From the IMG/VR virus record IMGVR_UViG_3300045974_000132, positions 186,001-250,000 of that record: a stretch of DNA of 64,000 bases. One strand, written 5' to 3'. This document shows, in pieces, positions 10,214-34,977 of the stretch (the stretch's first letter is position 1; every line of letters begins with the position of its first letter). Under the pieces are notes generated by a model. That model was not told the DNA's origin. It saw nothing but the letters and a program-made list of their open reading frames with translations, and did not search any database. The position numbers and the translations under genes were made by a program.

Positions 10214-10222
10214 TGCAATGCC

Positions 10223-11689: not shown

Positions 11690-11769
11690 GGGATTTCCGA
11701 TACGTTTTATGTACTATATATTTACACTATGTCGTAGTCATATAGAATACGGCCTTCCGGAAATAGAAA

Positions 11770-11791
11770 TAGGAGCCAAAAGAGGCTCCTA
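11770..11791 (-). terminator. probable intrinsic terminator TAGGAGCC/GGCTCCTA
   Basis: 8-bp stem followed by a T-rich tract on the minus strand. Confidence 0.6.
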
Positions 11792-11800
11792 GTTTCATAG

Positions 11801-12061
11801 TCAAAGAGTGAATTGACCTTCGGGAGGTTTCCACTTTGGGTCTGGCTGAAAGAACTGAGTTGAAGAGTAATTTGTCCAGCCGATCTTTGTTTTAAGGCCG
11901 ACCGGACAGTTCAAAGTCTTTGCTAAGTGGCTACCGCGATCTTTCCCACAAAGCAAACACTTATGGCAAATATTACTCTTCGTCTTCGTCGTCTCCGCTT
12001 TCTTCTTCGTCATCGTTACCCTTGTCACTATCTTTACCACCCTGTAGAGTGTATTCAACAA
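11801..12061 (-). CDS. small Cys/His hypothetical protein (start uncertain, overlaps the recA end)
   Basis: CLLCGK..H......C; ends just before the terminator. Confidence 0.4.
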   Translation of the reverse strand: MLNTLYRVVKIVTRVTMTKKKAETTKTKSNICHKCLLCGKDRGSHLAKTLNCPVGLKTKIGWTNYSSTQFFQPDPKWKPPEGQFTL

Positions 12062-13772
12062 AGAGGTCGATGCCGCGTCCGTTAGCGAGTTGAGCGAAAC
12101 ACTTGTCCCGAATCTTGACAGGCTTCATACCCACAGAGGCACAGATTTCCTTAATCTCAGCAGTCTTACCTAAGATAAGTTTCTTGAAGTCCATCCAAGA
12201 CATAAACTTCGTAGCTTCGTTACCTTCAAACATCAGCTTCATCTTGCGACGAGGGCCAGACACTTGACCGGTGAACTTCAGATACTGGAATACGTCGAAT
12301 ACTGGATCGAAGCCTTGTGCATTGCCCTTAGCATCAGTAATCCATAGACGCAGATACATTTCCAAGTACGGACGGCTGAGCTTGTTCTTGAATGCCCGAA
12401 CATGCAAGTAGCGATAGTTGTCCATACCTTTACCGTAAGTAGCGGAACGCTCAGATTCAATCTGGCCTTCACCCTTGACAGTCTCACCAAGGTGCTTACT
12501 AACAGCAGAGAGGGCGCGAGAGGTATGCTTCAGACGAACATCGCTGTAAAGCTTTAGTGCTTCACCGCAGGGCTCATATTCAGGATTACCCATCATCACC
12601 ATAGGACGCAAACGTAGCTGATTGATACCTAGGACAGCAATACGCTTACCCTTCATCTTACCCTTGACTCGACGAAGTTGCTCGGCAAACATACGAGCTT
12701 GAACACCGATAGAGCTATTCGGGTCATCAACGTCTTGTGTCTCAGGAAGCATAGCAGGATAGCTATCGACCAAAACCATAGCTTGCAGAGTACCGTCTTT
12801 AGCAGGGATGCGCCATAAGCCAGTCTTCTTGAAATAGTTCTTGTCGTACTTATCACCTACGATTGCTTGATTGGCTTTGTGAACCATCGACTTGCCCTTG
12901 ACCATCTTTTTGGACTCGTAGATGTAATACCAGTTTTCACCGATCTTCTTCTTATCAGGCAGCATACGCTGAAGCTGTGCCAGATAGTCGAAGAACTTTT
13001 CAGCGATAGCTTCTGAGTTGTAACGAACGCGAGGCTTGACAACCCAGTTGCCAGTCTTTTCATCCCGAACACCAAAGATGGATTTTACGTCAGCTTTAAC
13101 GCCCATGTTGCGCATGATGTTTTCGATGTAGTCAGGAGTAGCACTACCCTCGAAGTCAAAATACGACAAGATGGGAACATCAGAGTTCAGAGCCGCTGCA
13201 AGCATTGTTACCGCGTCAGTCGTCTTACACGACTGCTCTTGCCCGAAGTTTGTGTACCAGCCAGCAGTGATACCGCCACCTAGCACCAAGTCCATTGCAA
13301 GCGTACCTGTACTTTGGCGAGAATCGCTACCGTCCATTGAAGAAGCAGACAGACCGATGTGACGTTCGATTTCATCCAGCTGATTGTCAAGGTGGGCATA
13401 AGGATCAAAGTATTCAGTAGAAGCAAGAGCTTCAGCTTTGGTTTTCTTACGACCAGATACTACTACCTCTTCACCAGTTTCTGCTTTTGCACCGCGAGTT
13501 CTACGAGTAGGCTTTGTTTCAACAACTTCCTCAGCAGTTTTCCGAGAACGCCTTGTGGGCTTCTTCTCTTCAACCACTTCCTTAGAGGCCCGAGTAGTTC
13601 TACGCGCAGGCTTTGCTTCCTCAACAGGTGCTTTTGCAGTACGAGTTCTACGAGTAGGCTTTTCTTCTACTTCTTTAGCAGCCCGAGTACGACGCGCAGG
13701 TTGAGCTTCTTTTGTAGCAGCAGCAGAAGTACGACGACTACGTGCGGGTGGGGCTTCAGATTTTCTAGCCAT
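11973..13772 (-). CDS. recA: RecA/UvsX-like recombinase with a long Arg/Lys-rich N-terminal extension
   Basis: STGTLAMDLVLGGG, GQEQSCKTT, VLVDSYPAM, QARMF, INQLR, GEALKLYSDVRL, KNKL. Confidence 0.9.
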   Translation of the reverse strand: MARKSEAPPARSRRTSAAATKEAQPARRTRAAKEVEEKPTRRTRTAKAPVEEAKPARRTTRASKEVVEEKKPTRRSRKTAEEVVETKPTRRTRGAKAETGEEVVVSGRKKTKAEALASTEYFDPYAHLDNQLDEIERHIGLSASSMDGSDSRQSTGTLAMDLVLGGGITAGWYTNFGQEQSCKTTDAVTMLAAALNSDVPILSYFDFEGSATPDYIENIMRNMGVKADVKSIFGVRDEKTGNWVVKPRVRYNSEAIAEKFFDYLAQLQRMLPDKKKIGENWYYIYESKKMVKGKSMVHKANQAIVGDKYDKNYFKKTGLWRIPAKDGTLQAMVLVDSYPAMLPETQDVDDPNSSIGVQARMFAEQLRRVKGKMKGKRIAVLGINQLRLRPMVMMGNPEYEPCGEALKLYSDVRLKHTSRALSAVSKHLGETVKGEGQIESERSATYGKGMDNYRYLHVRAFKNKLSRPYLEMYLRLWITDAKGNAQGFDPVFDVFQYLKFTGQVSGPRRKMKLMFEGNEATKFMSWMDFKKLILGKTAEIKEICASVGMKPVKIRDKCFAQLANGRGIDLFVEYTLQGGKDSDKGNDDEEESGDDEDEE

Positions 13773-13835
13773 TATCACTTCCCTTAAATGAGTAAAGGGC
13801 TCGACCTTTTACAGCCAAGCCCCTGTACTTAGAAG

Positions 13836-15173
13836 TTAAAAAGGAATGTCGTCCTCTTCATCCTCGTCATCTTCATCACGCGACTTACGAGCAGGCTTCT
13901 TGGCAGGAGCCTTCTTAGGAGGAGCCTTCTTTGCGGGTGCGGCCTTCTTTACACCACGCTTGGGAGCGGGTTCATCATCCTCGTCGTCTTCGTCATCCAG
14001 ATCGTCGTCTTCATCATCGTCGAGGTCTTCATCATCCTCGTCGTCATCCTCGTCATCTTCATCACGGGAAGAACGCTTCTTGGAAGGAGCCGCTTTCTTT
14101 GCAGTAGCTTTCTTACCACGAGCAGGCGGTTCATCATCCTCGTCATCATCGTCGAGGTCTTCGTCATCCTCGTCGTCATCCTCGTCGTCATCCTCGTCTT
14201 CGTCACGCGAAGGACGCTTCTTGGAAGGAGCCTTCTTAGGAGGAGCCTTCTTTGCGCCGCGCTTAGGGGCCGGCTCGTCATCTTCGTCATCGTCGTCGAG
14301 GTCTTCATCATCCTCGTCGTCTTCGTCTTCATCATCGTCGAAGAATTCTTTACCCTTCTTTGCGGGAGCACCCTTCTTTGCAGGCGCTTTCTTCTTCTTA
14401 CCGCCTAGGTCATCCCCGTCATCATCGTCATCACCTTCGCCGTCAAATTCTTCGGCACCGACGATTTGCATAGAATCAAGTTGCTTCTTAGCAATAGCAG
14501 GGCTTTCAAGACCCATTTCCGTCAACAGCTCCGGATTCAGATCATAGACCAGATACCCGAGTTGTTCTTCAGTCAGCGGAGACTTGTCAGCTAGGTTGAT
14601 CTGATACTTGTCGCCACCCTTTGCTTTTTCATCGTAGCGGATATTAATGTCAATACCGTACTTAGCATCACTGATATGGAACGTCTTCTTAGCGCCCTTG
14701 ATAACACGCTTGTTGAGTTCCTTCAGGTCTTGAATCTTACGCATCAAGGTAGCAGTAATACGCATTACCTTAACAGGAGTCCAAGAGTTGCTAGACAGCT
14801 CCTTGAAGCCTGTCTTCTTTTCTTCCGGAGTAATACGAGCCTTACCCGGCTTTTCTTCTTCAACAGAGCGAACGATAACGTTCGCCAGATAGTTGACAGA
14901 AGTTTGGCTTTCAATAGTGCAGTATGGGCACTTGCAACCCTTCTTGCTCTCTTCCGTGATCGGGTCGAAAGAAACGCACAGCTTAGGAATCTTAACTTCG
15001 CGCTTAGTCTTACCTGCGAGAATATTAATCCAGTGAGTCTTCATTGCCAAAATGTCATTCGGCATAATACGAAGTTGAACCCACTTACCGTTCGGCAGTT
15101 TCAAAACATCGACAAGGTCTTCCAGTCGAGCATGGTCACCGCGTGTTTGAGGCTTGGCATCACCTAATTTCAT
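13836..15173 (-). CDS. probable single-stranded DNA-binding protein (gp32-like N-domain) with a long acidic/basic tail ending DDIPF
   Basis: next to recA; H..C/CPYC Zn-site-like residues; C-terminal DDIPF identical to the bacterial SSB tip. Confidence 0.7.
   Translation of the reverse strand: MKLGDAKPQTRGDHARLEDLVDVLKLPNGKWVQLRIMPNDILAMKTHWINILAGKTKREVKIPKLCVSFDPITEESKKGCKCPYCTIESQTSVNYLANVIVRSVEEEKPGKARITPEEKKTGFKELSSNSWTPVKVMRITATLMRKIQDLKELNKRVIKGAKKTFHISDAKYGIDINIRYDEKAKGGDKYQINLADKSPLTEEQLGYLVYDLNPELLTEMGLESPAIAKKQLDSMQIVGAEEFDGEGDDDDDGDDLGGKKKKAPAKKGAPAKKGKEFFDDDEDEDDEDDEDLDDDDEDDEPAPKRGAKKAPPKKAPSKKRPSRDEDEDDDEDDDEDDEDLDDDDEDDEPPARGKKATAKKAAPSKKRSSRDEDDEDDDEDDEDLDDDEDDDLDDEDDEDDEPAPKRGVKKAAPAKKAPPKKAPAKKPARKSRDEDDEDEEDDIPF
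13850..14450. repeat. imperfect coding repeats (e.g. CATCGTCGAGGTCTTC) encoding alternating D/E blocks and KKAP blocks
   Basis: visible in both DNA and translation. Confidence 0.85.
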
Positions 15174-15207
15174 TACAACTCCTTGTATTAAAATAGTACA
15201 ACATTAA

Positions 15208-16320
15208 TTATTTACAGTTACGTGTAGGTTGCACTGAAGCAGCCGCTACTAAAGCACTTTCAACACCTTTAGTCGGCATGAAGCCTAACTGTTTCTTCAT
15301 AGATCGAAGCATTCTGATCTTTTCCTTTCTAGATATATACTCGTCAAGGTCGAGATACAAACGAGCAATACCTAGATTGTCTGCACTTTTTATAAGATAG
15401 AGAAGAGTGGCAGACTCTTGGTCATCCTCTATCTGTCGATCAACACCCTGACAACCTACTAAGAAGTGCTTTAAGTCTATAGCACCTTCATCTTCGTTGT
15501 CACTCATTACGCTATCCAGGCTTACACTGAAGTTTACCTGAGACGCTTTAGTACCTTGTACATTCCTCTTTTGCAACTGAGGCATTGTATAAGCGATACC
15601 GTACTCATGCCCATAGTTGGCATTTGAATACGTTTGAGCATTTAGAATCCAATAGTTTATGTAACTGGTGAGAGCTCCTTTACTACTATCGTATTTATCA
15701 ATAGCTTTAGTAATTGCCGCCATTAAGCTTTGATAAACGTCTTTGAAGTCAAAGTTTCCAGTCTTTTGTTTGCAGAACGCATGGGCTTGCTTGTAACCAT
15801 GCTTTAGATACTGCTCCACAATGTTATTTCTAAAGGTATACGCGAGTTCAACGTAGTGCCTACATATGTTCAATGTAGAAAACAAGTGGTCGCGTGTAAA
15901 TCCTACGGTACGTTCTATAGCCTGCAACTTAAGGTCTAGGGTGGTTCGCTCCATGTGCTTGGAGCAAGTAAGGTATTTGGTATATAGATCCGTGTAATCT
16001 TCTGTTTCCGAAAGGAAGTTCACAAGGAAACTATATACAAAGCTGCGTTCAATCTTTGCTTTAGATAAAAGGTCTATCTTCCGATCAAGATCAGTAGTGG
16101 TAAGTACATTGCACAGACAGACAATGAATACTTCCCGCTCTAGGGCAGAGATTTTTCTTTTCTTGTTTGTTGCAGCTACACCTAATAGATGGGCTACTTG
16201 TATATCAAATACCTGACTATGGCGAATAATGGGTTCAAGACCCTTATAGATAAGGAAATCAAGAGCTTCCTGTATCTGCCCACCGGTCAGGTTTGAAGTG
16301 TCAATGGGCTTTTTATCCAT
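15208..16320 (-). CDS. phage sigma70-family sigma factor (divergent)
   Basis: region 2 DVYQSLMAAITKAIDKYDSSKGALTSYINYWI; region 3.2-like VSLDSVMSDNEDE. Confidence 0.75.
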   Translation of the reverse strand: MDKKPIDTSNLTGGQIQEALDFLIYKGLEPIIRHSQVFDIQVAHLLGVAATNKKRKISALEREVFIVCLCNVLTTTDLDRKIDLLSKAKIERSFVYSFLVNFLSETEDYTDLYTKYLTCSKHMERTTLDLKLQAIERTVGFTRDHLFSTLNICRHYVELAYTFRNNIVEQYLKHGYKQAHAFCKQKTGNFDFKDVYQSLMAAITKAIDKYDSSKGALTSYINYWILNAQTYSNANYGHEYGIAYTMPQLQKRNVQGTKASQVNFSVSLDSVMSDNEDEGAIDLKHFLVGCQGVDRQIEDDQESATLLYLIKSADNLGIARLYLDLDEYISRKEKIRMLRSMKKQLGFMPTKGVESALVAAASVQPTRNCK

Positions 16321-16377
16321 ACGATACCTTGAGTAAGTGTGTTATACTGATTCTTTTACAGTATCGCTAGTTTTATG

Positions 16378-16917
16378 TTACATGTGTTCTTCAATAACAG
16401 TACCAGCTAGTCTAACTAGGTGCTTGCACAGCATAGGTTGAAGCTGAGGATTGGTAACATTTGGGTGTTCACCGTTGGAATACTTGATCTTAGCACTACC
16501 CCAATGGTTTAGAGCTACCTCACAGTAGTAAAGGAAGTAGTCGCATTGGCAGGATACCAGAACATGCTTCTGCCTAGACAGAGGAATATCCTTTTCCTTA
16601 CCGATAATATCAGTAGCGTACACATTGCGCTGACCTTTATTACCAACAGACAACACCTTTGCACGAATAGCCGGAAAGCCACCCTTGGTGGTAGCCGGCT
16701 TTAGCATCTTGACCAACACTTCATGAGCATTGTTTTTGATGAAAGGCGGGGTAGCACGAATCAAAGCTTTAAGGCTTAAGCCATCTAGCTTATAATCTAT
16801 TGTCTCAGGCTTTGCTTTACCACGAGGTGCAGGGGCTACCTTGTCACGTTTTACCTGAACCGGACTGGGCTTTGTCTGAGCTACGCGTCTTCCTGCTTTA
16901 ATAGTAATCTTTGCCAC
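16378..16917 (-). CDS. SWIM-type zinc finger protein
   Basis: VSCQCDYF...LCKHL. Confidence 0.7.
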   Translation of the reverse strand: MAKITIKAGRRVAQTKPSPVQVKRDKVAPAPRGKAKPETIDYKLDGLSLKALIRATPPFIKNNAHEVLVKMLKPATTKGGFPAIRAKVLSVGNKGQRNVYATDIIGKEKDIPLSRQKHVLVSCQCDYFLYYCEVALNHWGSAKIKYSNGEHPNVTNPQLQPMLCKHLVRLAGTVIEEHM

Positions 16918-16966
16918 GATGTACTCTCCTTATAAATGAGTACAATTAAATTAGCAACGGTGGCAT

Positions 16967-17329
16967 TTAAGAGGATATGCGCTGCGTAACAGTTGCCCCG
17001 TTCTCAAGGTCTTCAGAAACCTCAACAGAACAATTGCGAACACCGTAGCAGGAGTTCAAATACCCGATCACATTATGTGCAATCATTTCACAAGATCGGT
17101 GTTGCAGATCAGTACCTGTTAAGAACTTATCCAGCCCACGTTTGACCAAGATGAACTCAAGTTCACGATCATCATGGAAGACTTCAATAGTTGCCTTCAC
17201 ATGAAAGATGTGTCGGTGAGGGCTACGAAGGAATGCTACTTCATCAGGGGCATCTGGGTAGCAATGAATGCCTTCAAAAGAAGTAGTAACAAAGATCGTA
17301 GTATGGCAGGAAGTAATCACAGGGACCAT
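16967..17329 (-). CDS. QueD/6-pyruvoyltetrahydropterin synthase-like (T-fold) protein
   Basis: FEGIH...HRHIFHV metal-binding His motif; SCEMIA; VSED. Confidence 0.7.
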   Translation of the reverse strand: MVPVITSCHTTIFVTTSFEGIHCYPDAPDEVAFLRSPHRHIFHVKATIEVFHDDRELEFILVKRGLDKFLTGTDLQHRSCEMIAHNVIGYLNSCYGVRNCSVEVSEDLENGATVTQRISS

Positions 17330-18270
17330 TTGTCAGCCTCAATGTGTTTGAAGAACTCAATAGTTTTCAGAACGCCATCTTCTAAGGGCAGATACAGACG
17401 CTTAGAAAAGACACGCTTATACTTAGACAAGTCAGGCTTACGCACTTTGGGATCATCCGCCGGTAGGTCTTTGTGGATGAATTGATCGAACTTAGTTAAG
17501 CGCCCTACAATATCTGCAAGTTGCTCAATTGTAAACTCTTGGTCATTGCCTAAGTTCATCGGCCCATAGTTGTTATCGTTTGTCATGACCTGCCAGAGCA
17601 TATCAATCATATCACTAACGTAACAGAAGCTACGAGTCTGCTCACCTGAACCATAGATTGTAATAGGCTTGCTTTCGAGAGCTTGAGTGATAAAGTTTGA
17701 AACTACCCGTCCGTCGTTGTAGGCCATGTTAGGCCCATAAGTGTTGAACAGTCGAACAACACGGATATCAACGTTGGTAGTACGCTTATAATCTGCACAA
17801 AGCGTTTCAGCAGCCCGCTTACCTTCATCGTAGCAAGCACGTGGGCCAGTGATACTTACGTTGCCGTTGTACGACTCAGGCTGCGGATGTACTTCAGGGT
17901 CACCGTAAACTTCAGAAGTAGAGGTGAACAGCATACGTGCGCCTGTCTTGTTGGCAAGATCAAGCATGTTTTTCGTGCCGATAACAGAAGTCATCAACGT
18001 CTTAATCGGATCACGCGAATACCACTCAGGGCTTGCAGGACAAGCTAAGTGATATATGTAATCCAGATCAGACAGATAGAAACCAGTATCACAAACATCC
18101 AAATTGATGAAGTGAAAGTTCTTATGTTGCAGGAAGGGCTTAATGTTAGCACCCGATGAACAGCTAAGGTTGTCCAAACAGAACACTTCATTGTTGGGAT
18201 TGCAGAGCAGTCGATAGCAAAGATTACTACCTAGAAAACCTGCACCGCCTGTTACTAGAATGCGTGACAT
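17317..18270 (-). CDS. UDP-glucuronate decarboxylase (UDP-xylose synthase-like SDR)
   Basis: GGAGFLG, HLACPASP, STSEVYGDP, PRACYDEGKR, RLFNTYGP, DGRVVSNF, DDPKVRKPD. Confidence 0.9.
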   Translation of the reverse strand: MSRILVTGGAGFLGSNLCYRLLCNPNNEVFCLDNLSCSSGANIKPFLQHKNFHFINLDVCDTGFYLSDLDYIYHLACPASPEWYSRDPIKTLMTSVIGTKNMLDLANKTGARMLFTSTSEVYGDPEVHPQPESYNGNVSITGPRACYDEGKRAAETLCADYKRTTNVDIRVVRLFNTYGPNMAYNDGRVVSNFITQALESKPITIYGSGEQTRSFCYVSDMIDMLWQVMTNDNNYGPMNLGNDQEFTIEQLADIVGRLTKFDQFIHKDLPADDPKVRKPDLSKYKRVFSKRLYLPLEDGVLKTIEFFKHIEADKWSL

Positions 18271-19463: not shown

Positions 19464-19465
19464 GG

Positions 19466-19654
19466 TTATTTAATCTCAGGAATGCACATCATCAAAGCTT
19501 TATGGGCTTCTTCAACGTGACGGACGTAAACTACTACTCCATCATTCATATCATTGATTGCTGCCTTCGTACAAGCCAGTTGAACATCAGTAGGCGTTAT
19601 AGGAAGCAGAGCGTATTTTGTTTCGTCGTAGGTGATTGTTTTCATAAGATGCAA
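19466..19654 (-). CDS. small hypothetical protein
   Basis: inside the tightly coupled operon. Confidence 0.5.
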   Translation of the reverse strand: MHLMKTITYDETKYALLPITPTDVQLACTKAAINDMNDGVVVYVRHVEEAHKALMMCIPEIK

Positions 19655-20055
19655 AGATCGGACAGAGTTAGTACCGCTATGTTAGGGCGCAATTCTGCTA
19701 TGCGTGATGCGATCTTCTCACAGCTTTCTACAAAGATGGTAATATTGTTTTCGTCGATAGCGTTTACTTTGAATAGAGCAGACTCTTCTGTATCCAAAAC
19801 CTTATCTTCAGAATTATGTACGACACGGCACCGCAATTGGAAATAATTCTGTGCCCAAATATAAGTATCGTGATAGTCAGAAGACGGACGACCTGTAACA
19901 ATGTAGAAGTGTTCATGCTGCGGTATGAACAAAGGCTTCAGATGATACCTAGCCTTAACTACCGACATTAATTGTTCTTGTGATAAACCTTCTACGTTAA
20001 TGTCAGGGCATAATATTCCGTCAAGATCATACCCATAAATGTCAGCTAGTCCCAT
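19642..20055 (-). CDS. HAD-superfamily phosphatase-like protein
   Basis: YDLDGIL, VTGR, conserved K, FVES. Confidence 0.7.
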   Translation of the reverse strand: MGLADIYGYDLDGILCPDINVEGLSQEQLMSVVKARYHLKPLFIPQHEHFYIVTGRPSSDYHDTYIWAQNYFQLRCRVVHNSEDKVLDTEESALFKVNAIDENNITIFVESCEKIASRIAELRPNIAVLTLSDLCIL

Positions 20056-22745: not shown

Positions 22746-22811
22746 ATCAACTCACTTTATGAAAGGGATTATATACATACAGTTTACAGTTTTCTCTTTT
22801 TGCGGACATGG

Positions 22812-22835
22812 AAAAGGGTAGCTCAAAGGCTACCC
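22812..22835 (-). terminator. intrinsic terminator GGGTAGC/GCTACCC-TTTT
   Basis: 7-bp stem plus T tract after the Cas4-like gene. Confidence 0.7.
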
Positions 22836-22856
22836 AATTCTTTAAAGCTTTAAATC

Positions 22857-23798: not shown

Positions 23799-23860
23799 AG
23801 TTGTGTTATCCAGATACTGTAAAAGTAATGTACTTGATTCAAATTATGGTCGATGTAAAA

Positions 23861-24904: not shown

Positions 24905-25209
24905 GTTCTTGGATTCTTGAAATAGATACTGATTCAGACTGTTGGTTGAACTTTATAAATCCTGTAAATAATGAAGAGAACAAGTTAAGATCAAGAATAA
25001 GGGCAGAATTTAACGGAGCTACGCATTTAACAAAGCTATTCAGTTTTCTTGATACGCTAGAGGTTGTAGATAGGCCAGATAAAGAAGGTTGTGCAGTAGA
25101 ATTAAAGCGCTACCTAAAACAGTTACGCAGAGTCAAAAGTGAAGACTTCCGCAAGGGTGGAAACATCACAGTCTCTTATAAGAAGTTGGTTGTTGAATTT
25201 TCAATATAA
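24901..25209 (+). CDS. hypothetical protein
   Basis: ATGA overlap with primase. Confidence 0.65.
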   Translation: MSSWILEIDTDSDCWLNFINPVNNEENKLRSRIRAEFNGATHLTKLFSFLDTLEVVDRPDKEGCAVELKRYLKQLRRVKSEDFRKGGNITVSYKKLVVEFSI

Positions 25210-25218
25210 GGATTAATT

Positions 25219-25908: not shown

Positions 25909-25972
25909 CACCTGAGTTACATAACACAATACAATAGAATCACTATAAACCCAAGCAATAAAGGTATAATCC

Positions 25973-28462
25973 ATGACTTTTATCGAGTCTATCAAAGATG
26001 TATATGAGGTACCAGAAGGCATGCCTCTAGCGGTATTTCAGAATAAGTACAGCCGAGTCAAATACCTCGAAGACAACCCGAACTATGATGCAACTGTAAT
26101 AGGTAGCAACCCGAAACGCCCTGTATATCAAACATGGGAAGAGCGTATCACAGAAGTTGTCGAAGGTAACTTCACTCTCGATCCGCGTTTCGGACCAAAG
26201 ACGCCAGAAAACTGTGCTTCATTCTTTGATGATCTGTATGCACCCTGGGACAATCTAGGTACTAAAGAAGAATTCTCAGCACGTAAAGAATTCCGTGATA
26301 CACTGCGCTTATCTAAGCAAGGTGTAATGCCTTACTCCGGTCGACATTTGCAGCACGGTGATAGAGTTCAGTATGCAAAGACAGGTGAGTTATTTACCAA
26401 CTGTTCTACTGCAATGTTCTCATGGACATTGTTCTATCTTCTACTCAAAGGCAGCGGTGTAGGTCGTGATTACTCTTCAGATATTTGCTGGGTTGACTGG
26501 GAGTACATGCCTGAGTGCCGTTTCGTACTCGACGGGCCAGATCAATGGGGTAACGGCGGTCATCCGGACTATGAGCCGTGGATTGAAAGTCTGCGTTCAG
26601 CAAGACACAAGTACGACAGTGAAGGTGAGAAGGTTCGTTGGTTTGATGTAGAAGACAGCGCAGAAGGCTGGGTCAAGATGATTATGATTCTTGAGACAGC
26701 TGCCTTCCATAAGAACAACAAAGAGCATCTGTTTGTCTTTAACTTTACGCCAGTTCGGAGTAAAGGCACGCCAATAAAAGGTCAGCAAGATAGACCAGCT
26801 TCAGGACCAGTACCGTTGATTGAAGCAATGATTAAGATAATGACCATCAAAGGGGCAGGATTTAAACCTTGGAAGCAAGCATTATTCATTGATGACTATC
26901 TAGCAGCATGCGTTGCAGTAGGTGGAATTCGGCGGGCTGCACGAATGTCTACTAAGTATTGGAAAGACCGTGATGCTCTGGAATTTGCTGACATTAAACG
27001 TGAAGGCTTCTTGAAGAGTGCTAATAATAGCTTGCTGGTAGACGCTGAATTTTGGGAGCTTGTGCGCAACCCAACAAACCGCGAATCATGGGCTGTACAT
27101 GCGCGCCGTGTGTTTGCAGCTGCAACGGAAGCTGCGTATCATGATGGTACAGGGGAACCTGGCTTCATCAACGTCGATCAACTTACGTGGAGCGATGAAG
27201 GTATTGATGAAATCACGGTGGACAACTACATAGATGTTCATTACGATAAGAATGTTCTTCGTGTGCACAAGAAGACGAAGGAAATGATTGGCTACATGCT
27301 GGACAAAGCCAAGCATAAGAAGTACAAGGTGATCGTGAATCCTTGTGCAGAAATCCCAATTGCGGTTTGGGGTGCTTACTGTACGATCGGTGATATCTGC
27401 GGTACTTATGCACGAACGCTTGAAGAATTCAAGTATGCTTGCTGGTTGATGGCTCGTGCCCTGATGCGTGTAAACCTGATGCAGTATATGTACAGTGCGG
27501 AAGTAAAACGCACTATGCGTATCGGCGTAGGTATGATTGGCATCTTCGAGTTTGCTTGGAATCACTTCCAAATCAATCTGCACGAAATCCTGCTGTCTGA
27601 ATTGCCGCCAGATCATCCGAAGGTGCTGGCTGCTATCGAAGCGGAAATAGTCCAGACAATGGGAGAAGATGGCTCTACGTTGGATAGTTACAACGTATAT
27701 GAGCGGAGCTTGCAGTACGCCAAGTTCATCGAAGAGTGTCGTGAAACAGTTGAACAATCGGCTCGTCAATATGCTGCTGAAATCGGTGTCAATGTTCCGC
27801 ACACGTTTATTACATTGAAGCCCTCAGGCACTGCATCTAAAGCACTAAATAGTACCGAAGCTGCAAACCCACCCTCAAACAATTTCTATCTGCGTAATAA
27901 CCAGTATCCGTTTGATGATCCTCAGTATCTTGAACTACGTCGTCGCGGATATCCTTGGCAAGACATAAGTCACTCGTATGCAGGTCATCACATCGTTGGT
28001 TTTCCAACCAAGCAGCAAATATCGGACATCATGGGTGACAAGGTTGTTGTATCAGCAGAACTTACGCCTGAAGATCAGTATGAGTGGTTGCGTTGGCTTG
28101 AACGTCATTGGTTTGGTGGCAAAGGCCGTAATGGTCAAGTATCATTCACAATGAAATACTACCCAGATCAGGTATCATTCAAAGAGTTTCAACAGTTGTT
28201 AATCGAGCACCAAAGCACAGTTAAGTGTTGCTCATGGATGCAGATCATGGATATGAGTAAGTTCCCATATCAGCCTGAGCAGCCAATTACTGAAAAGCAA
28301 TACTATGATTACCTAGAAGGCATTGATCGTGTTCAGATTGAAAGCTATGATGAATCAGAACTACAGTGTCCCGGTGGCTTCTGCCCAATCGAGAAAGATC
28401 AGTTGGTCTTTGCAGACGGTAGTAATGTGACAGATGCTGATCTTCAAGGTGCTTCAAACTAA
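25973..28462 (+). CDS. nrdJ: class II (adenosylcobalamin-dependent) ribonucleotide reductase
   Basis: TNC, GSGVG, ASGP, VGGIRRAA, GEPG, NPCAE, KPSGT, C-terminal CPGGFC; no beta subunit nearby. Confidence 0.85.
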   Translation: MTFIESIKDVYEVPEGMPLAVFQNKYSRVKYLEDNPNYDATVIGSNPKRPVYQTWEERITEVVEGNFTLDPRFGPKTPENCASFFDDLYAPWDNLGTKEEFSARKEFRDTLRLSKQGVMPYSGRHLQHGDRVQYAKTGELFTNCSTAMFSWTLFYLLLKGSGVGRDYSSDICWVDWEYMPECRFVLDGPDQWGNGGHPDYEPWIESLRSARHKYDSEGEKVRWFDVEDSAEGWVKMIMILETAAFHKNNKEHLFVFNFTPVRSKGTPIKGQQDRPASGPVPLIEAMIKIMTIKGAGFKPWKQALFIDDYLAACVAVGGIRRAARMSTKYWKDRDALEFADIKREGFLKSANNSLLVDAEFWELVRNPTNRESWAVHARRVFAAATEAAYHDGTGEPGFINVDQLTWSDEGIDEITVDNYIDVHYDKNVLRVHKKTKEMIGYMLDKAKHKKYKVIVNPCAEIPIAVWGAYCTIGDICGTYARTLEEFKYACWLMARALMRVNLMQYMYSAEVKRTMRIGVGMIGIFEFAWNHFQINLHEILLSELPPDHPKVLAAIEAEIVQTMGEDGSTLDSYNVYERSLQYAKFIEECRETVEQSARQYAAEIGVNVPHTFITLKPSGTASKALNSTEAANPPSNNFYLRNNQYPFDDPQYLELRRRGYPWQDISHSYAGHHIVGFPTKQQISDIMGDKVVVSAELTPEDQYEWLRWLERHWFGGKGRNGQVSFTMKYYPDQVSFKEFQQLLIEHQSTVKCCSWMQIMDMSKFPYQPEQPITEKQYYDYLEGIDRVQIESYDESELQCPGGFCPIEKDQLVFADGSNVTDADLQGASN

Positions 28463-28473
28463 GGAAAACTTAA

Positions 28474-28755
28474 ATGGACGTAGGTACTAGTAGGGAAATG
28501 CCTAAGTATGTGTGCCACAAAGAAGTATGGGCACTAAAGATCAAAGCTATTGAGGTTTTGTTTGTAGATGAAGATGATTCAGTACATGCAATCATCACGC
28601 CTGAAGAAGAAGGCTATGCTCCTTTTAAAGTAGATGAAGCATACCTTAACAAGCACAAACCTTTAGTAGGCGGTTACTATGTCTTATACAAAGGTGGCTA
28701 TCAATCCTTTAGTCCAGCTAAGGAATTTGAGGAAGGCTATACGCAATTAGTGTAA
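28474..28755 (+). CDS. conserved phage hypothetical protein
   Basis: KYVCHKEVWALKI...GYYVLY..GYQSFSPAKEFEEGY pattern. Confidence 0.7.
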   Translation: MDVGTSREMPKYVCHKEVWALKIKAIEVLFVDEDDSVHAIITPEEEGYAPFKVDEAYLNKHKPLVGGYYVLYKGGYQSFSPAKEFEEGYTQLV

Positions 28756-28758
28756 AAA

Positions 28759-28791
28759 GATAGGGAGTGTACAGTCTGCACTCCCTATTTT
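28759..28791 (+). terminator. intrinsic terminator ATAGGGAGTG/CACTCCCTAT-TTT
   Basis: long stem plus T tract. Confidence 0.75.
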
Positions 28792-28809
28792 CATTTGAAG
28801 GAATAATAT

Positions 28810-29097
28810 ATGTTGCTACTTCATGTGCAGTGTGAAAACCCATATGATCTAAATAGTAGTACCAAGAAACAAGATCGTGCCTATGCAACTAACAAAGAAC
28901 TCCATGAAGCTATTGCAGACCTAAAGGAGTATAAAGCTCTTATTGAAAATAGGTCTACTGCATTTAAGCCTAACATGATCTTGCTTTCAGTTAGTGAAAT
29001 TGACAATCTTACAGCCGATGAAATGAAATTCATGGGCATTACTCTTATTGAAGGTATGCTGGAAGCTATAAAGGCACATCCAGCTATATCACAATGA
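28810..29097 (+). CDS. hypothetical protein
   Basis: AAGGA RBS. Confidence 0.6.
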   Translation: MLLLHVQCENPYDLNSSTKKQDRAYATNKELHEAIADLKEYKALIENRSTAFKPNMILLSVSEIDNLTADEMKFMGITLIEGMLEAIKAHPAISQ

Positions 29098-29387
29098 TAA
29101 CAATTGTCCACTGTGAACAAAAGCCCTTTGACATCTATATAGGTAGAGAGAGTCATGGTCGAAAACGATCAAAGTGGGCAAACCCTTTCATAATAGGGCG
29201 TGACGGCACTAGAAAAGAAGTGATTGCAAAGTTTAGGCAATGGATGAAGAACAATCCTCTACTAGCAGACTTGCATGAACTTGACAATAAAGTATTAGGC
29301 TGTTGGTGCGGAAAGAAGTCTTGTCATGGGCAAGTGCTTATAGAATTACGCGAACAACAAAAACGAAAATCATTGTTTCCTATATAG
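29094..29387 (+). CDS. DUF4326-like protein
   Basis: DIYIGR...SKWANPF...LGCWC...CHG. Confidence 0.8.
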   Translation: MITIVHCEQKPFDIYIGRESHGRKRSKWANPFIIGRDGTRKEVIAKFRQWMKNNPLLADLHELDNKVLGCWCGKKSCHGQVLIELREQQKRKSLFPI

Positions 29388-29396
29388 GTAGGCATT

Positions 29397-30464
29397 ATGC
29401 TACGCGGTGTATCAACATCTGACTGGCACCTTGACGGTGGCCTTAGTAATGTATTCAAAGAAAAAGCTTTACCAAAGATGCTCCATGAACTTGATAAGAT
29501 TTTCAAGTATTGTGTCGAGAACGATATTCACCATCTATTTATGTCCGGTGATATTTCTGATAAAGCTAGGCTGGATGAAGAAACATTTATTGCTTTAGTT
29601 ACCTTGCTGTTGAAATACGATCAGTATGTAAACTTCTACTACCTATTAGGCAATCATGATGTGGCGCATGTTGGTCGTACATCAATTGACGTTCTTCGTA
29701 TTTTTGCAGAGAACGGTGGTCTAAAGAATGTTCGTATATTCAGCAAGCCTGAAGTTATCACTATCGACGGTATTGAAGTAGGATTTGTACCATTCCCTTA
29801 TACGCAACTTGAGACTAAAGATAAAACACCTAAGCTAATCTTTGCACACATTGAAGAAGCTGGAGCAATAGGTGACAATGGACATCCTCTGAAGTCACAG
29901 CACCTTAAGTTGCTACGTAGCAAGGATGATTTTGTATTCAGTGGACACCTGCATACTTATCAAGTAATGAAAGATAGACGTATTGTGTTCCAAGGTGCTC
30001 CGTATCAGAAGAACTTCGGTGAGCAAGGTAAGAAGGGCTTTGTTGAATTCAAAGCTCGTTATAGTCGTGACGGTGATCTTCAGGTCAAACCAACGTTCGT
30101 AGATAATCGTCCTGAGTTTACTCTTATCAATCTTGCGATCAATGAGGATGCAGACTTTGATAAGATTGAGCGCAATGAAAACATGCTTTACAAGATCACA
30201 TTAGGTGAAGGAGTTATTGCACCTAAGGGTATTACGCGAGACTTTCCAAACATCATTATGTTGAACGGCGTGTCTTATAAAGGGCGCTCAAACATTGATA
30301 CCTCTGAGAAAATGTCAGCGGAAGATATTCCAAAGATCACTCCTCTTACAGGCCTTGTTAAGTATCTGCACAAGTATGAGCTTGAAAAAGCAGAAGTAAA
30401 ACGAGCAGTAAGTATGGTCAAGGAAGCTATTGCGTTCATCCAAAATAACGGAGTACCGAAATGA
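29397..30464 (+). CDS. SbcD/Mre11 (gp47-like) nuclease
   Basis: SDWH, GDISD, GNHD, SGHLH, GAPYQKNFGE. Confidence 0.9.
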   Translation: MLRGVSTSDWHLDGGLSNVFKEKALPKMLHELDKIFKYCVENDIHHLFMSGDISDKARLDEETFIALVTLLLKYDQYVNFYYLLGNHDVAHVGRTSIDVLRIFAENGGLKNVRIFSKPEVITIDGIEVGFVPFPYTQLETKDKTPKLIFAHIEEAGAIGDNGHPLKSQHLKLLRSKDDFVFSGHLHTYQVMKDRRIVFQGAPYQKNFGEQGKKGFVEFKARYSRDGDLQVKPTFVDNRPEFTLINLAINEDADFDKIERNENMLYKITLGEGVIAPKGITRDFPNIIMLNGVSYKGRSNIDTSEKMSAEDIPKITPLTGLVKYLHKYELEKAEVKRAVSMVKEAIAFIQNNGVPK

Positions 30465-31413: not shown

Positions 31414-31419
31414 GATCAA

Positions 31420-31659: not shown

Positions 31660-31671
31660 AATTCAGCCAAC

Positions 31672-31709
31672 AAAAAGCCCCGGCTCTTAATTGAGTACGG
31701 GGCTTTTTT
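31672..31709. terminator. bidirectional terminator AAAAAGCCCCG...CGGGGCTTTTTT
   Basis: inverted repeat between convergent genes. Confidence 0.85.
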
Positions 31710-31715
31710 ACGTCC

Positions 31716-32264: not shown

Positions 32265-32344
32265 AAAAATACCGTGTGTAAAATAAATATGAGAAAACTA
32301 CACTTGCATGTATTATTTACAGTTTTTGATATAAATCAATAGTT

Positions 32345-33195
32345 TAGCGTGCCTTACTAGAAAGCACTTTAAATAGACGGTATATGCTATTGGGAAACAC
32401 CTGGCAGAATCTACGGGAAAACAGAGCCTAGAAAAGATAGCGTATGTAGGTTTCTGACTAGGGCTTAAACCATACTGTAAACTACGGTTATAACATGAGT
32501 GTTGTGTGAGTTGGATCGCAGAGCCAATGAGTGTAGCTTGTTATACAGAGTAGCTAGCCGTCGGCGATTGAGACATGTGGGAGTATCATGTGCACTGGAT
32601 CTTTAAGGTTTAGCTAATCGGGCAATTGAACTTTCCAGCAGTCTCTAGTGTGGGCTGACCAGTTCGCTACTGTGCTACCATATAGGCGTCACCGCTGAAG
32701 GCGGGGCGGGAGAGGGTTTAGAAGCCGGAGGCTGATGATTCCCTGACTTGAATTTCGCGGAGCGTAAGTGGCCGTAGTGAGCGGAGCGAGCGAAGGGAAG
32801 TAACGTAGCGTAGCAGGAAATTTAAGGCCTTGAGTGAGCGCAGCGAACGAAGGATATAAGGCAACACAAATGACAACGGAAAAGCAGCTACCATATAGGC
32901 GATTGACAGGCTCCGGGTGTTTGTCAGCTACCTATAAGGCGAACAGATGCCGTGAGGCAAGGTTGCTCATATCCGCGGTCTTACAGACCTTACTTATTAT
33001 GAGTAATCAGTAAAATCTTAAGGAATAATCTAATTTGAACTAAGTTAGAAGGATGTTAACTTATAGATCCTTAATAGAAGTTTTTCCAAAGGAAAAACTT
33101 TGTTTTCTTTAAACACGCGACGCTTCGGCGCCTGCGCTCACCCTGATGATTGCTCTCGGGATGACCGCGCTGGCCACCGCCTGTGCGTAGCTAAA
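32345..33195. other. structured non-coding island (candidate replication origin and/or long ncRNA)
   Basis: no ORF of 60 aa or more; 15-bp and 21-bp direct repeats; many hairpins; AT-rich segment. Confidence 0.6.
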
Positions 33196-33199
33196 TAGT

Positions 33200-33697
33200 T
33201 TGTTAAAGGTTATGCAAAAAAGACTATTAGCGCACCAGTTAGTAGAAGCCTCTAAAGTATTTGCTTACAAAGGTGAGCTATACTTTAAAAGGATTGCTCC
33301 TACTACAGCCGTTGCTCCTCTGTACAACACGGGTCATTACTTCGACCTATCATGTAACGGACTGAGCTTAAAATTCCACCCTATAAGCTTTACACTCCGC
33401 TCTGTACAGCCTATAATCTCTATCAGGGACTTACTTGATCGTGAGTGCTTGCTTGAACGTGCTTTCTTCACCTGCTATTACGATCCTTATTTGTTGATCG
33501 AGGACGTCAAGATCGTTACTAAGATTACCTTAGAAAGTGCAGGTATATCTTACTTATTAAACTGTAAAGTATATACACCGAAGTACGAAATGTTCTATGA
33601 CTACCTTTTGCCAGGTGCTCAAAGACGACATGTTACCGTAAGGGTGGAAAATGTTACAGTCGCACCTTCAATTATCATCAAAAATAAAGCTCCTTAG
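33200..33697 (+). CDS. hypothetical protein
   Basis: 165 aa ORF. Confidence 0.55.
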   Translation: MLKVMQKRLLAHQLVEASKVFAYKGELYFKRIAPTTAVAPLYNTGHYFDLSCNGLSLKFHPISFTLRSVQPIISIRDLLDRECLLERAFFTCYYDPYLLIEDVKIVTKITLESAGISYLLNCKVYTPKYEMFYDYLLPGAQRRHVTVRVENVTVAPSIIIKNKAP

Positions 33698-34061
33698 TCC
33701 TACGTTTGTGCAAGCGGCCATCCAGTTTAATAGGGATGCAATAGCGAAGCCAAACTACTTGGGTAGCAATGAATGGTTGTATAGTCCCACTGTAGACCTA
33801 TACATCAAAAGTTATTTTCGACACATTAAAGGTGAGTATGTCCGAACGCTTGTTGTATCCAACGTTCGGGTATATACTCAGCACAAAGGACTGTATGATG
33901 CAGTCCTCAGTTTAATGTACAGCCTTCTTTCAGTCGGTGAAGCTGTCTTCATCGAGAACGTATTAGACCCTGAGCAAATTCCTATTTATACGCGCAGAGG
34001 TTTTCAGCAATACAATGTTGGGCAAGAAGGACCTCCGTCTTTCTTTTTCATCAAAGTATAA
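33651..34061 (+). CDS. putative GNAT-like acetyltransferase
   Basis: VRVYTQHKGL and YTRRGF resemble GNAT motifs A and B. Confidence 0.45.
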   Translation: MLQSHLQLSSKIKLLSPTFVQAAIQFNRDAIAKPNYLGSNEWLYSPTVDLYIKSYFRHIKGEYVRTLVVSNVRVYTQHKGLYDAVLSLMYSLLSVGEAVFIENVLDPEQIPIYTRRGFQQYNVGQEGPPSFFFIKV

Positions 34062-34206
34062 ACATCTTTAACTCAAACCGTAGGAGGTAGCACACGAAAC
34101 ATACCCGCCCTTTAAGGGTGGAACAACGCGATATGGAAACTTTAAATAACGTCGGTATCACAAACATCCATATTACGCTCAACCACATCTTCTAAGGAGG
34201 TGCCGA

Positions 34207-34869
34207 ATGTATATTCCGCATATATCCTGCCTTTTCAAGGCTGCAACAAAATCACTTTCATCAACCCTTTGCCTGCTTGCTCTAGTTTTGATTCCGTTGC
34301 AAGCTTGTAGTAATATCGAATCATTATCTTCTGTTTCTCCTGAGCTACCTATCGTTTTGAACAACGAAACTTTCAAGCAGGAAGAAGCAGCGCAAAAGCC
34401 GCTAGTGACCGATGATACTGATTCCGTCTTTGCGGCTAAGGCCTCTTCATACATGAAGAGGGTAAATAAAAACCTTTCAGACAATGATGCTCGTGCTTTT
34501 GCCGTGTACATCAATCGTGCGTCTGAGGAGTACGGTGTTGATAAACACTTGCTCTTAGCGTTGATTCGGATAGAAAGCCGATTCAATCGCACTGCCAAGT
34601 CACCAGATGGCGCTAAAGGTTTAACTCAGGTGATTCCCAGGTATCATAGGAGTAAGATCGCAGAAGCACAACGCTTCTATAAAGGCGACTTATTTCATCC
34701 GGGGGTAAGTATATTCGTAGGGGCTTCTGCATTCCGTGAATGTATTCAGAACACTAGGGATATATCGTCAGCTTTGTTGTGCTACAACGGAAGCCAATGG
34801 GACAGGTCTAAGCATTATGCTAAACTTGTACTCGGGGAATACCGGGTAGTTAAAGCACAAGTTCTATAA
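34207..34869 (+). CDS. soluble lytic transglycosylase (SLT) with N-terminal signal or lipobox-like segment
   Basis: LIRIESRFN..AKS..GAKGLTQV; ALLCYNG. Confidence 0.9.
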   Translation: MYIPHISCLFKAATKSLSSTLCLLALVLIPLQACSNIESLSSVSPELPIVLNNETFKQEEAAQKPLVTDDTDSVFAAKASSYMKRVNKNLSDNDARAFAVYINRASEEYGVDKHLLLALIRIESRFNRTAKSPDGAKGLTQVIPRYHRSKIAEAQRFYKGDLFHPGVSIFVGASAFRECIQNTRDISSALLCYNGSQWDRSKHYAKLVLGEYRVVKAQVL

Positions 34870-34872
34870 GCA

Positions 34873-34909
34873 AAAGGGCAGTTGTCTAATCGGGCAGCTG
34901 CCCTTTTTT
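34873..34909 (+). terminator. intrinsic terminator AAAAGGGCAG.../CTGCCCTTTTTT
   Basis: stem plus T6 directly after SLT. Confidence 0.8.
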
Positions 34910-34977
34910 GCCTTCTGGATTACGCATTCAATACTGTAAAAACTGTATATGATTACTCTAACTTCGACCCTACGTCC

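What the first reader, a model, noticed from the sequence alone, without database searches (positions are those of the whole stretch)
11719..34941. Recurrent (C/G)TGTAAA motif upstream of replication genes: candidate promoter for the phage sigma factor
Seen: the motif lies on the coding strand about 30-50 nt upstream of starts for MoxR (11719-27), recA (13807-14), SSB (15209-17), sigma itself (16354-61), TGT (22782-89), primase (23817-24), the 32264 gene (32314-22) and the 34978 gene (34934-41), and also at 32475. It is often followed 6-10 nt later by TA(T/C)A. I saw no TTGACA/TATAAT pair at these genes. Inference: a middle-class, -10-only style promoter analogous to T4 TATAAATA, with possible sigma autoregulation.
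Basis: partly seen in the sequence, partly recalled or inferred. Interest (0 to 1): 0.6.

Follow-up and report, generated by a model that had tools for sequence, protein, structure and literature searches.

The report
Conserved jumbo-phage middle promoter motif
The recurring CTGTAAA motif is real and is almost certainly a compact, -10-only promoter for DNA-metabolism genes; related giant phages share it and phage Lu11 already annotates it, but which of two phage sigma-like proteins reads it is unresolved.

Summary
The window is bases 186001-250000 of a 286-kb pond-metagenome jumbo phage of the Lu11/PaBG/NCTB/Y3 group.

One (32475) is marginal. The recA site is a chance copy in a terminator loop.

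The full element is aAWA-CTGTAAA-TA-NNNN-GTA, with no -35 partner. It faces the downstream gene, usually 31-39 nt before the start codon. It is enriched about eight-fold (27 vs 3.2 hits of at least 14 bits). It is the only invariant block upstream of the ssDNA-binding-protein gene in nine phages whose sigma is 35-100% identical.

Ribosome-binding sites begin as little as 12 nt after it, so it must act as a -10-type element, not an upstream activator box.

The Lu11 GenBank record already annotates the same 16-mer as 'putative middle/late promoter', so this is a new member of a known kind.

Assigning it to the sigma at 15208-16320 is not shown. The genome has a second conserved -10-like motif (TAATTTA) before late genes, and a second, ECF-like sigma-like protein outside the window. 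Both sigma-like genes lie downstream of CTGTAAA sites, so the pairing of factor and motif is open. The site before the sigma gene recurs only in the closest relative checked, so autoregulation is not a clade feature.

The parts
15211..15217 (-). M1 promoter core CTGTAAA (full element about 15197-15221) overlapping the last codons of the sigma gene, 37 nt before the SSB start at 15173
   Evidence: 22.2 bits on the relatives-only matrix. ACTGT.AA is the only invariant block in the SSB upstream region of nine phages.
16355..16361 (-). M1 core 34 nt before the sigma start at 16320
   Evidence: 12.2 bits. L004 has GATA-GTGTAAA at the same place. Absent in L005-L007.
22783..22789 (-). M1 core 37 nt before the start (22745) of a 463-aa protein of unknown family
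   Evidence: 14.2 bits. Conserved before the ortholog in L004, L005 and L006. Preceded by the terminator-like hairpin 22835-22816.
23817..23823 (+). M1 core 37 nt before the primase start at 23861, in a divergent intergenic region
   Evidence: 16.5 bits. Conserved before primase in L004, L006 and L007. Toprim_2 and DnaG zinc-ribbon hits.
11721..11727 (-). M1 variant GTGTAAA-TATATA-GTA, 31 nt before the MoxR-like ATPase start at 11689
   Evidence: 13.8 bits. L004 has ATGTAAA at the same place. Both follow a terminator hairpin, here 11791-11770.
32316..32322 (-). M1 core 51 nt before the start (32264) of a 182-aa protein of unknown function
   Evidence: 20.9 bits; context.
34934..34940 (+). M1 core 37 nt before the ATG at 34978 (200-aa protein)
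   Evidence: 18.7 bits; context.
32475..32481 (+). Marginal M1-like copy inside an ORF-poor stretch of about 930 nt
   Evidence: 8.5 bits. No ORF of 60 aa or more on the + strand until 33200.
13808..13814 (-). Chance CTGTAAA in the loop of the terminator hairpin after the SSB gene; not a promoter
   Evidence: Below 8 bits, no A-rich flank. L004 has the same hairpin with the loop CTAATA.
24962..24968 (+). Candidate internal M1 site inside the 102-aa gene, 250 nt before the dCTP-deaminase-like gene
   Evidence: 15.8 bits. A CTGTAAA also lies inside the L004 gene that follows primase. Coding constraint is not excluded.
15208..16320 (-). Phage sigma factor, 370 aa, sigma-70 regions 1.2 to 2
   Evidence: Sigma70_r2 at E 6.7e-7. 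phrog_17569 at E 3.8e-95. Model residues 9-247 match the E. coli sigma-70 fragment 1SIG (Z 12.5, 223 aligned, rmsd 3.6). It is the only region-2 match in the genome.
16941..16948 (-). Second-class motif CTAATTTA (M2), about 30 nt before the 179-aa gene that precedes sigma
   Evidence: Conserved before the ortholog in L004 and L005.
11770..11791 (-). Terminator-like hairpin directly upstream of the MoxR M1 site
22816..22835 (-). Terminator-like hairpin directly upstream of the M1 site at 22789

Best explanation
The motif is the core of a compact, single-block promoter, aAWA-CTGTAAA-TA-NNNN-GTA. Its most likely register is TG at -14/-13, TAAATA at -12 to -7, and the A of GTA at about +1. There is no -35 element.

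It starts transcription of DNA-metabolism ('middle') genes of this jumbo phage: SSB, sigma, primase, a MoxR-like ATPase and several unknowns. The same element is used in the relatives examined (Lu11, NCTB, Y3 and the metagenomic contigs).

Host core RNA polymerase carrying a phage-encoded sigma-like factor most likely reads it. The window's sigma (15208-16320) is one of two candidates.

Shown: the motif, its orientation, its position, its enrichment and its conservation. Inferred: promoter function, the start site and the factor.
For: - Enrichment and orientation.
- Matrix trained on relatives only: 27 hits of at least 14 bits in this genome against 3.2 +/- 1.4 in Markov-simulated genomes.
- Same word over-represented in relatives against its backwards control: G001 19 vs 2 and Lu11 25 vs 2; NCTB 27 vs 8 and Y3 19 vs 4.
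- Orthologous conservation before SSB, primase and the 463-aa gene while the flanks diverge. ACTGT.AA is the only invariant block in nine phages.
- The pooled profile has no information at -25 to -5, and has TA and R-T-A at fixed offsets.
- Shine-Dalgarno sequences begin 12-20 nt after the motif in 7 of 16 clear cases, so the start site must lie within about 12 nt of it.
- Terminator-then-motif arrangement.
- The Lu11 record annotates the same 16-mer as 'putative middle/late promoter', there before Pol III and endonuclease genes.
- A sigma with a sigma-70-like domain 2 is encoded here.
Against: - No transcript data exist. Only DNA runs from pond and freshwater metagenomes hold this sequence.
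- Nothing links the motif to a particular factor.
- A G at the second position of TGTAAA, or an A at -7 in the alternative register, departs from what sigma-70-type domains usually read (my own knowledge).
- PaBG shows only weak enrichment (9 vs 3) and has CTGTCAA before SSB. Sen-NF has the sigma but no enrichment.
- One site precedes a tail-tube gene, so 'middle only' is not strict.
Confidence: 0.75

Rival explanations
1. The motif is a promoter, but the window's sigma does not read it. The second sigma-like protein (G000 126748-127848, ortholog of PaBG gene 112) reads CTGTAAA. The window's RpoD-like sigma, itself made from CTGTAAA promoters as a middle gene, reads the late TAATTTA promoters. 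This would be a two-step cascade like SPO1 or T4.
For: - A second conserved motif, TAATTTA, precedes tail sheath, tail fibre, head protease and holin genes.
- Its hexamer TAATTT keeps the TAnnnT pattern typical of sigma-70-type -10 elements (my own knowledge).
- The window's sigma sits among CTGTAAA-driven genes and directly behind one.
- The 366-aa protein models with sigma-2-like and sigma-4-like parts. Z is 8.4-9.3 to ECF and sigma-28 factors, with 78-79 residues at rmsd 2.4-3.1 to RpoE and SigE domain 2, and Z 6.6 to T4 gp55.
- Two of its homologs are named sigma-24 by JGI. PaBG authors reported HHpred 97% to sigma (PMC7412058).
- It is present in the relatives examined except Sen-NF.
Against: - Z values of 8-9 for a helical protein are in the grey zone by the tool's own note. 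There is no Pfam hit and no significant PDB hit by sequence.
- The second gene also lies downstream of CTGTAAA sites in G001 and Lu11, so cascade logic does not favour it either.
- The late motif also stands before the 179-aa gene and sigma, which fits several schemes.
Confidence: 0.3
2. The motif is a binding box for a phage activator that redirects host sigma-70 holoenzyme, like the MotA box of T4 middle promoters, with a separate -10 element downstream.
For: - Some sites have TATAAT-like hexamers 7-9 nt downstream (22789, 16361, 34934).
- One genome copy lies in the spacer of a perfect TTGACA-N17-TATAAT (G000 132296).
Against: - No conserved TAnnnT at a fixed offset in the pooled profile or in the nine-phage alignment.
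- Ribosome-binding sites start 12-20 nt after the motif in 7 of 16 clear cases. A start about 20 nt downstream would leave them out of the mRNA.
Confidence: 0.07
3. The motif acts at the RNA level, as a 5'-UTR processing, stability or translational-control site, or is another DNA signal unrelated to initiation.
For: - It is strand-specific and upstream of genes, as an RNA element would be.
- Several copies are followed by hairpins.
Against: - Distance to the start codon varies from 23 to over 100 nt.
- Copies sit just after terminators and on both sides of a divergent intergenic region.
- The conserved A-rich 5' flank and the fixed GTA offset fit an initiation site.
- No Rfam family matches.
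Confidence: 0.05

Closest known systems
'Putative middle/late promoter' features of Pseudomonas phage Lu11 (GenBank JQ768459; CTGTAAATAnnnnGTA)
   Same: Same core, same A-rich 5' flank, same TA and GTA offsets, and the same kind of downstream genes (SSB, Pol III, endonuclease). The genome is of the same phage group and has orthologous sigma, SSB and RecA in the same order.
   Different: This is a metagenomic phage with 43.7% G+C and a sigma only about 39% identical. C is more often replaced by G or A at weaker sites. The Lu11 annotation is itself only a prediction; I found no experimental test. The Lu11 paper could not be read.
T4 late promoters (TATAAATA, read by gp55 with gp33 and the sliding clamp)
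   Same: A single AT-rich -10-type block without a -35 element. TGTAAATA differs from TATAAATA at one base. A phage-encoded sigma-family protein is the presumed reader.
   Different: It serves DNA-metabolism genes, not late genes. It has an added conserved C and A-rich flank. The window's sigma is a 370-aa protein with sigma-70 regions 1.2 to 2, not a gp55 ortholog. No gp33 or clamp dependence is known here.
Extended -10 promoters of bacterial sigma-70 (TGnTATAAT)
   Same: A TG just upstream of an AT-rich hexamer, and no need for a -35 element.
   Different: TG abuts the hexamer without the spacer base. The hexamer is TAAATA (A, not T, at -7) or TGTAAA (G at -11). This genome has true sigma-70 consensus promoters elsewhere, and they look quite different.
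T4 middle promoters (MotA box plus sigma-70 -10)
   Same: Same temporal class of genes; a phage-specific box upstream of them.
   Different: No fixed downstream -10 element, and the ribosome-binding sites are too close for the box to sit at about -30.

Membership tests
Lu11-type CTGTAAA 'middle/late' promoter of Lu11/PaBG-group jumbo phages | Core CTGTAAA with an A-rich 5' flank | tested here: met
   Pooled profile A(-4) 33/62, A(-3) 44/62, A/T(-2) 57/62, A(-1) 50/62. Seven window sites score at least 12 bits on a matrix trained on G001 and Lu11 only.
Lu11-type CTGTAAA 'middle/late' promoter of Lu11/PaBG-group jumbo phages | TA directly after the core and GTA six bases after it (the Lu11 16-mer) | tested here: met
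   T 42/62, A 40/62, then G/A 52/62, T 38/62, A 36/62. In the window this is clear at 11727, 22789 and 23817, and looser at 15217 and 16361.
Lu11-type CTGTAAA 'middle/late' promoter of Lu11/PaBG-group jumbo phages | Intergenic, co-oriented, a few tens of nt before start codons | tested here: met
Lu11-type CTGTAAA 'middle/late' promoter of Lu11/PaBG-group jumbo phages | Genome belongs to the phage group (orthologous sigma-SSB-RecA block) | tested here: met
Lu11-type CTGTAAA 'middle/late' promoter of Lu11/PaBG-group jumbo phages | Transcripts start at the element | not testable with these tools
   No RNA run holds the sequence. No published mapping was found for the group.
T4 late promoter | 8-bp TATAAATA box | tested here: not met
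   Consensus is TGTAAATA. CTATAAA is only weakly enriched: 12 intergenic to 28 coding.
T4 late promoter | No -35 element | tested here: met
   Information content is 0.11 bit or less at -25 to -5.
T4 late promoter | Serves late (virion, lysis) genes | tested here: not met
   Downstream genes are SSB, sigma, primase, MoxR and (in Lu11) Pol III. In this genome late genes carry TAATTTA instead.
T4 late promoter | Read by gp55 with gp33 and the sliding clamp | not testable with these tools
   The only relevant result is a weak fold match of the second sigma-like protein to gp55 (7d7d_F, Z 6.6).
Bacterial sigma-70 -35/-10 promoter | TTGACA, 16-18 nt, TATAAT | tested here: not met
   41 matches against 33 +/- 6 expected in 11000-30000, none at these genes. 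The genome's five perfect consensus promoters lie elsewhere.
T4 middle promoter (MotA box) | Box near -30 with a sigma-70 -10 element 11-13 bp downstream | tested here: not met
   No fixed downstream hexamer. Ribosome-binding sites begin 12-20 nt after the motif.

The most novel reading that the evidence does not exclude
In the giant phages examined here (Lu11, PaBG, NCTB, Y3, Motura, PhiXhv-12 and metagenomic relatives), gene expression may run on two -10-only promoter classes of identical geometry: cTG-TAAATA-N4-GTA for DNA-metabolism genes and s-TAATTT-a-N3-GTA for virion and lysis genes. Each would be read by one of two very divergent phage sigma-like proteins. One is RpoD-like and has no recognisable region 4; the other is ECF-like with a 130-aa N-terminal extension. 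A few perfect host-type sigma-70 promoters would start the cascade. To my knowledge neither the TAATTTA class nor the two-factor scheme has been described: TAATTTA is not annotated at the two Lu11 sites I checked.
Probability: 0.35. Interest if true: 0.55.

Novelty: new member of a known kind. Interest (0 to 1): 0.35.

Why it matters
Jumbo phages without their own RNA polymerase are assumed to redirect the host enzyme with their own sigma factors, but for this group nobody appears to have mapped a promoter or paired it with a factor (2026 review).

The comparative evidence here turns a database annotation into a well-supported, clade-wide regulatory element with a defined register and predicted start site. 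It also shows a second motif class and a second candidate factor. That gives a concrete two-by-two in vitro transcription experiment in cultivable relatives such as Lu11, PaBG or Y3.

For annotating metagenomic jumbo phages, the two motifs give a cheap way to call operon starts and temporal classes.

Tried and rejected
- Free iteration of a weight matrix over the whole genome at a low threshold drifted into a coding-periodicity signal and was dropped. A matrix trained on relatives only replaced it.
- RNA evidence: the one run search found only three DNA runs (pond and freshwater metagenomes). No reads were laid.
- Pairing factor and motif by presence or absence failed.
  - The profile search finds the second sigma-like protein in every relative examined that has the first (Lu11, PaBG, NCTB, Y3, PhiXhv-12, Motura).
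  - Sen-NF lacks the second protein, but it also lacks both motifs and has too little intergenic DNA to give a motif of its own.
- Pairing by cascade logic failed. Both sigma-like genes lie downstream of CTGTAAA sites in all three whole genomes.
- Profile-profile comparison of the two sigma-like families was not significant, although the aligned stretch was the expected domain 2.
- Sequence search of the second protein against PDB chains, and Foldseek on its model, gave nothing significant. Only the exhaustive structural aligner brought up sigma factors.
- The C-terminal 120 residues of the window's sigma (237-290 low confidence, then helices) could not be classed as region 3/4 or not.
- No tRNA or Rfam family is in the window.
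- The Lu11 genome paper (PMC3372202) is not held. A literature search for the motif word gave no relevant paper.
Full report
**What the window is.**
The window is bases 186001-250000 of a 286,393-bp virus record with direct terminal repeats, rated complete. It has 43.7% G+C and was found only in pond and freshwater metagenome DNA runs.

- Its sigma factor (15208-16320, minus strand, 370 aa) is 35-40% identical to the sigmas of Pseudomonas phages HRDY3, PaBG and Lu11, phage NCTB, and the Dickeya and Erwinia Y3-like phages. It is up to 89% identical to metagenomic relatives.
- The order sigma, ssDNA-binding protein, RecA is the same in PaBG, NCTB, Y3 and Sen-NF and in four metagenomic contigs.
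- It therefore belongs to the group that the PaBG authors call 'Lupandier' (PMC7412058).

Yes, for most sites.

- STGTAAA occurs 38 times in the window against 22.6 +/- 4.4 in shuffles.
- In the whole genome CTGTAAA is 29 intergenic to 50 coding, although 86% of the genome is coding (p = 8e-7). ACTGTAAA is 19 to 14. The same letters read backwards show nothing.
- In upstream regions oriented with their gene the word reads 21 forward to 2 reverse.
- A quarter to a half of all copies in this genome and two relatives lie within 120 nt upstream of a co-oriented start, against about 7% expected. Most distances fall between 25 and 55 nt, clustering at 31-39.

I trained a weight matrix only on sites of two relatives (G001, a 281.6-kb IMG/VR genome with a sigma 56% identical, and Lu11). 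This genome has 27 hits of at least 14 bits against 3.2 +/- 1.4 in Markov-simulated genomes.

- The recA copy lies in the loop of the terminator hairpin that follows the SSB gene. Relative L004 keeps the hairpin but has another loop.

**Anatomy.**
Pooling 62 sites from three genomes gives aAWA-CTGTAAA-TA-NNNN-(G/A)TA. There is no information in the 20 bases upstream, so no -35 partner. Copies inside genes lack the flanks.

In this genome the first C is sometimes G or A: GTGTAAA before MoxR here, ATGTAAA in L004, and GTGTAAA before sigma in L004.

**Comparative evidence.**
- The word AACTGTAAA occurs 19 times in G001 and 25 times in Lu11, against 2 each for the backwards control.
- ACTGTAAA is 27 vs 8 in NCTB, 19 vs 4 in Y3, 9 vs 3 in PaBG and 4 vs 4 in Sen-NF.
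- The element stands before the orthologous SSB, primase and 463-aa genes in contigs with 43-52% G+C, while the sequence around it has diverged.
- In an alignment of the 80 nt upstream of SSB from nine phages, the only invariant columns are A-C-T-G-T-x-A-A. PaBG has CTGTCAA.
- Two window sites follow terminator-like hairpins directly.

**How it most likely works.**
Two readings were compared: a -10-type element with the start a few bases downstream, or an upstream box (like T4's MotA box) with a separate -10 element.

The second reading fails for two reasons. No hexamer is conserved at a fixed offset downstream. And in 7 of 16 sites with a clear Shine-Dalgarno sequence, that sequence begins only 12-20 nt after the motif, so a start about 20 nt downstream would exclude it from the mRNA.

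With TAAATA as -12 to -7, TG lies at -14/-13 and the A of the conserved GTA falls at +1. In that register the element reads TGTAAATA, one base from T4's late TATAAATA.

The genes served are SSB, sigma, primase, a MoxR-like ATPase, unknowns and, in Lu11, Pol III and an endonuclease. One tail-tube gene is an exception. Promoter function and start site are inferred; no RNA data exist.

**Already known?**
The Lu11 GenBank record carries 16-nt 'regulatory' features noted 'putative middle/late promoter'. Their sequences are CTGTAAATACATAGTA, CTGTAAATACAGTGTA and CTGTAAATGGTGAGTA, each preceded by AAAA. This is the same element.

I could not read the Lu11 paper, and I found no experimental mapping for this group. 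A 2026 review says only that such sigmas 'likely' direct host polymerase to phage promoters.

**Which factor?**

- First, a second motif is at least as enriched: CTAATTTA here (19 intergenic to 8 coding), TCGTAATTTA in G001 and GTAATTTAA in Lu11, with the shared core TAATTTA. It precedes tail sheath, tail fibre, head maturation protease and holin genes. Pooled, it has the same geometry as the first motif: TAATTT, four bases, then GTA, and no -35 element.
- Second, the genome has only one Pfam region-2 sigma. Its model matches the E. coli sigma-70 fragment 1SIG over residues 9-247 (Z 12.5).
- Third, there is also an ortholog of PaBG gene 112 (G000 126748-127848, 366 aa). The PaBG authors suspected gene 112 of being a sigma. 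Its model (pLDDT 82.6) aligns best with ECF, sigma-28 and sigma-E domain 2 (Z 8.4-9.3; 78-79 residues at rmsd 2.4-3.1). Over residues 131-366 it aligns with whole two-domain sigmas. These Z values are in the grey zone for helical proteins, but the top of the list is almost entirely sigma factors.
- Both proteins occur in all relatives examined, including Motura and PhiXhv-12 by profile search. Sen-NF has only the first.
- Both genes lie downstream of CTGTAAA sites in all three whole genomes.
- The operon of the 179-aa gene plus sigma carries a conserved TAATTTA site in this phage, L004 and L005.

Neither phyletic pattern nor cascade logic pairs factor and motif. I put the window's sigma reading CTGTAAA at about 0.4, the other protein at about 0.3, and host sigma-70 with an activator below 0.1.

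**Autoregulation.**
The site 34 nt before sigma (12.2 bits) is kept only in L004, as a G variant. In L005, L006 and L007 sigma abuts the upstream gene, and in L007 the two-gene operon has a CTGTAAA site further up. If the window's sigma does read this motif, feedback would exist here, but it is not a conserved feature.

**Verdict.**
The promoter reading is well supported by orientation, position and deep conservation. It is a new member of an already annotated kind. The link to the 15208-16320 protein is open. The second motif class and the second sigma-like protein are the more interesting by-products.

Noticed in passing
Whole genome G000; in the window at 16941-16948 (-), 24819-24826 (+) and about 33030 (+): A second, even more enriched upstream motif: CTAATTTA here, TCGTAATTTA in G001 and GTAATTTAA in Lu11, with the shared core TAATTTA. 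It lies 20-45 nt before tail sheath, tail fibre, head protease and holin genes, and has the same hexamer-N4-GTA geometry as the CTGTAAA element. It looks like the late promoter class. It is not annotated at the two Lu11 sites I checked.
   Followed up: partly
G000:C1:126748-127848 (-), outside the window (L070:1477-2577:-): A 366-aa ortholog of PaBG gene 112 whose predicted structure resembles ECF and sigma-28-type sigma factors (domain 2 at residues 130-225, possible domain 4 at the C-terminus). It has no Pfam hit and is conserved across the phage group. It is a candidate second phage sigma.
   Followed up: partly
window 7815 (-) and 54430 (+); also G000 132296 (-), 178567 (-), 278779 (+): Five perfect TTGACA-N17-TATAAT promoters, four of them with a TG extended -10, where about 0.1 is expected by chance. 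These are probably strong host-type early promoters, and they hint at a host with a standard sigma-70 consensus.
   Followed up: partly
window 5358-5798 (-): A 146-aa protein with a bacterial RNA polymerase alpha C-terminal domain (PF03118, E 6.5e-8, above cut-off). An ortholog with the same domain is in relative L004. A phage-encoded alpha-CTD mimic could be part of host polymerase takeover.
   Followed up: no
window 32265-33200: A stretch of about 930 nt without an ORF of 60 aa or more. It is bounded by a strong CTGTAAA site facing left (32322) and holds a marginal one facing right (32475). There is no tRNA or Rfam hit, only one 15-nt direct repeat and one imperfect inverted repeat. Its function is unknown; it could be a non-coding transcript or an origin.
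   Followed up: partly
It is conserved next to the PD-(D/E)XK nuclease gene in relatives and always has its own CTGTAAA site. Downstream genes here and in relatives include PRTase, epimerase/dehydratase, glycosyltransferase, QueC-like and PAPS-reductase-like proteins, which suggests a DNA-modification or sugar module.
   Followed up: no
window 11973-13772 (-): The RecA-like protein is long (599 aa), with the Pfam RecA match split in two stretches. Orthologs range from 451 aa to over 800 aa in Y3. Insertions or inteins are possible.
   Followed up: no
window 7898-11689 (-): A MoxR-like AAA ATPase (bpMoxR domain) followed by a 771-aa protein with a VWA domain. The pair is conserved in relative L004. 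It is a MoxR-VWA pair in a phage replication module.
   Followed up: no
G000 89304 (-), 184843 (-), 252249 (+); Lu11 130482, 234373, 240977: Several CTGTAAA sites are followed within 10-25 nt by a strong hairpin. Either the terminator of the preceding operon is placed after the next promoter, or this is a stabilising 5'-UTR stem-loop.
   Followed up: no
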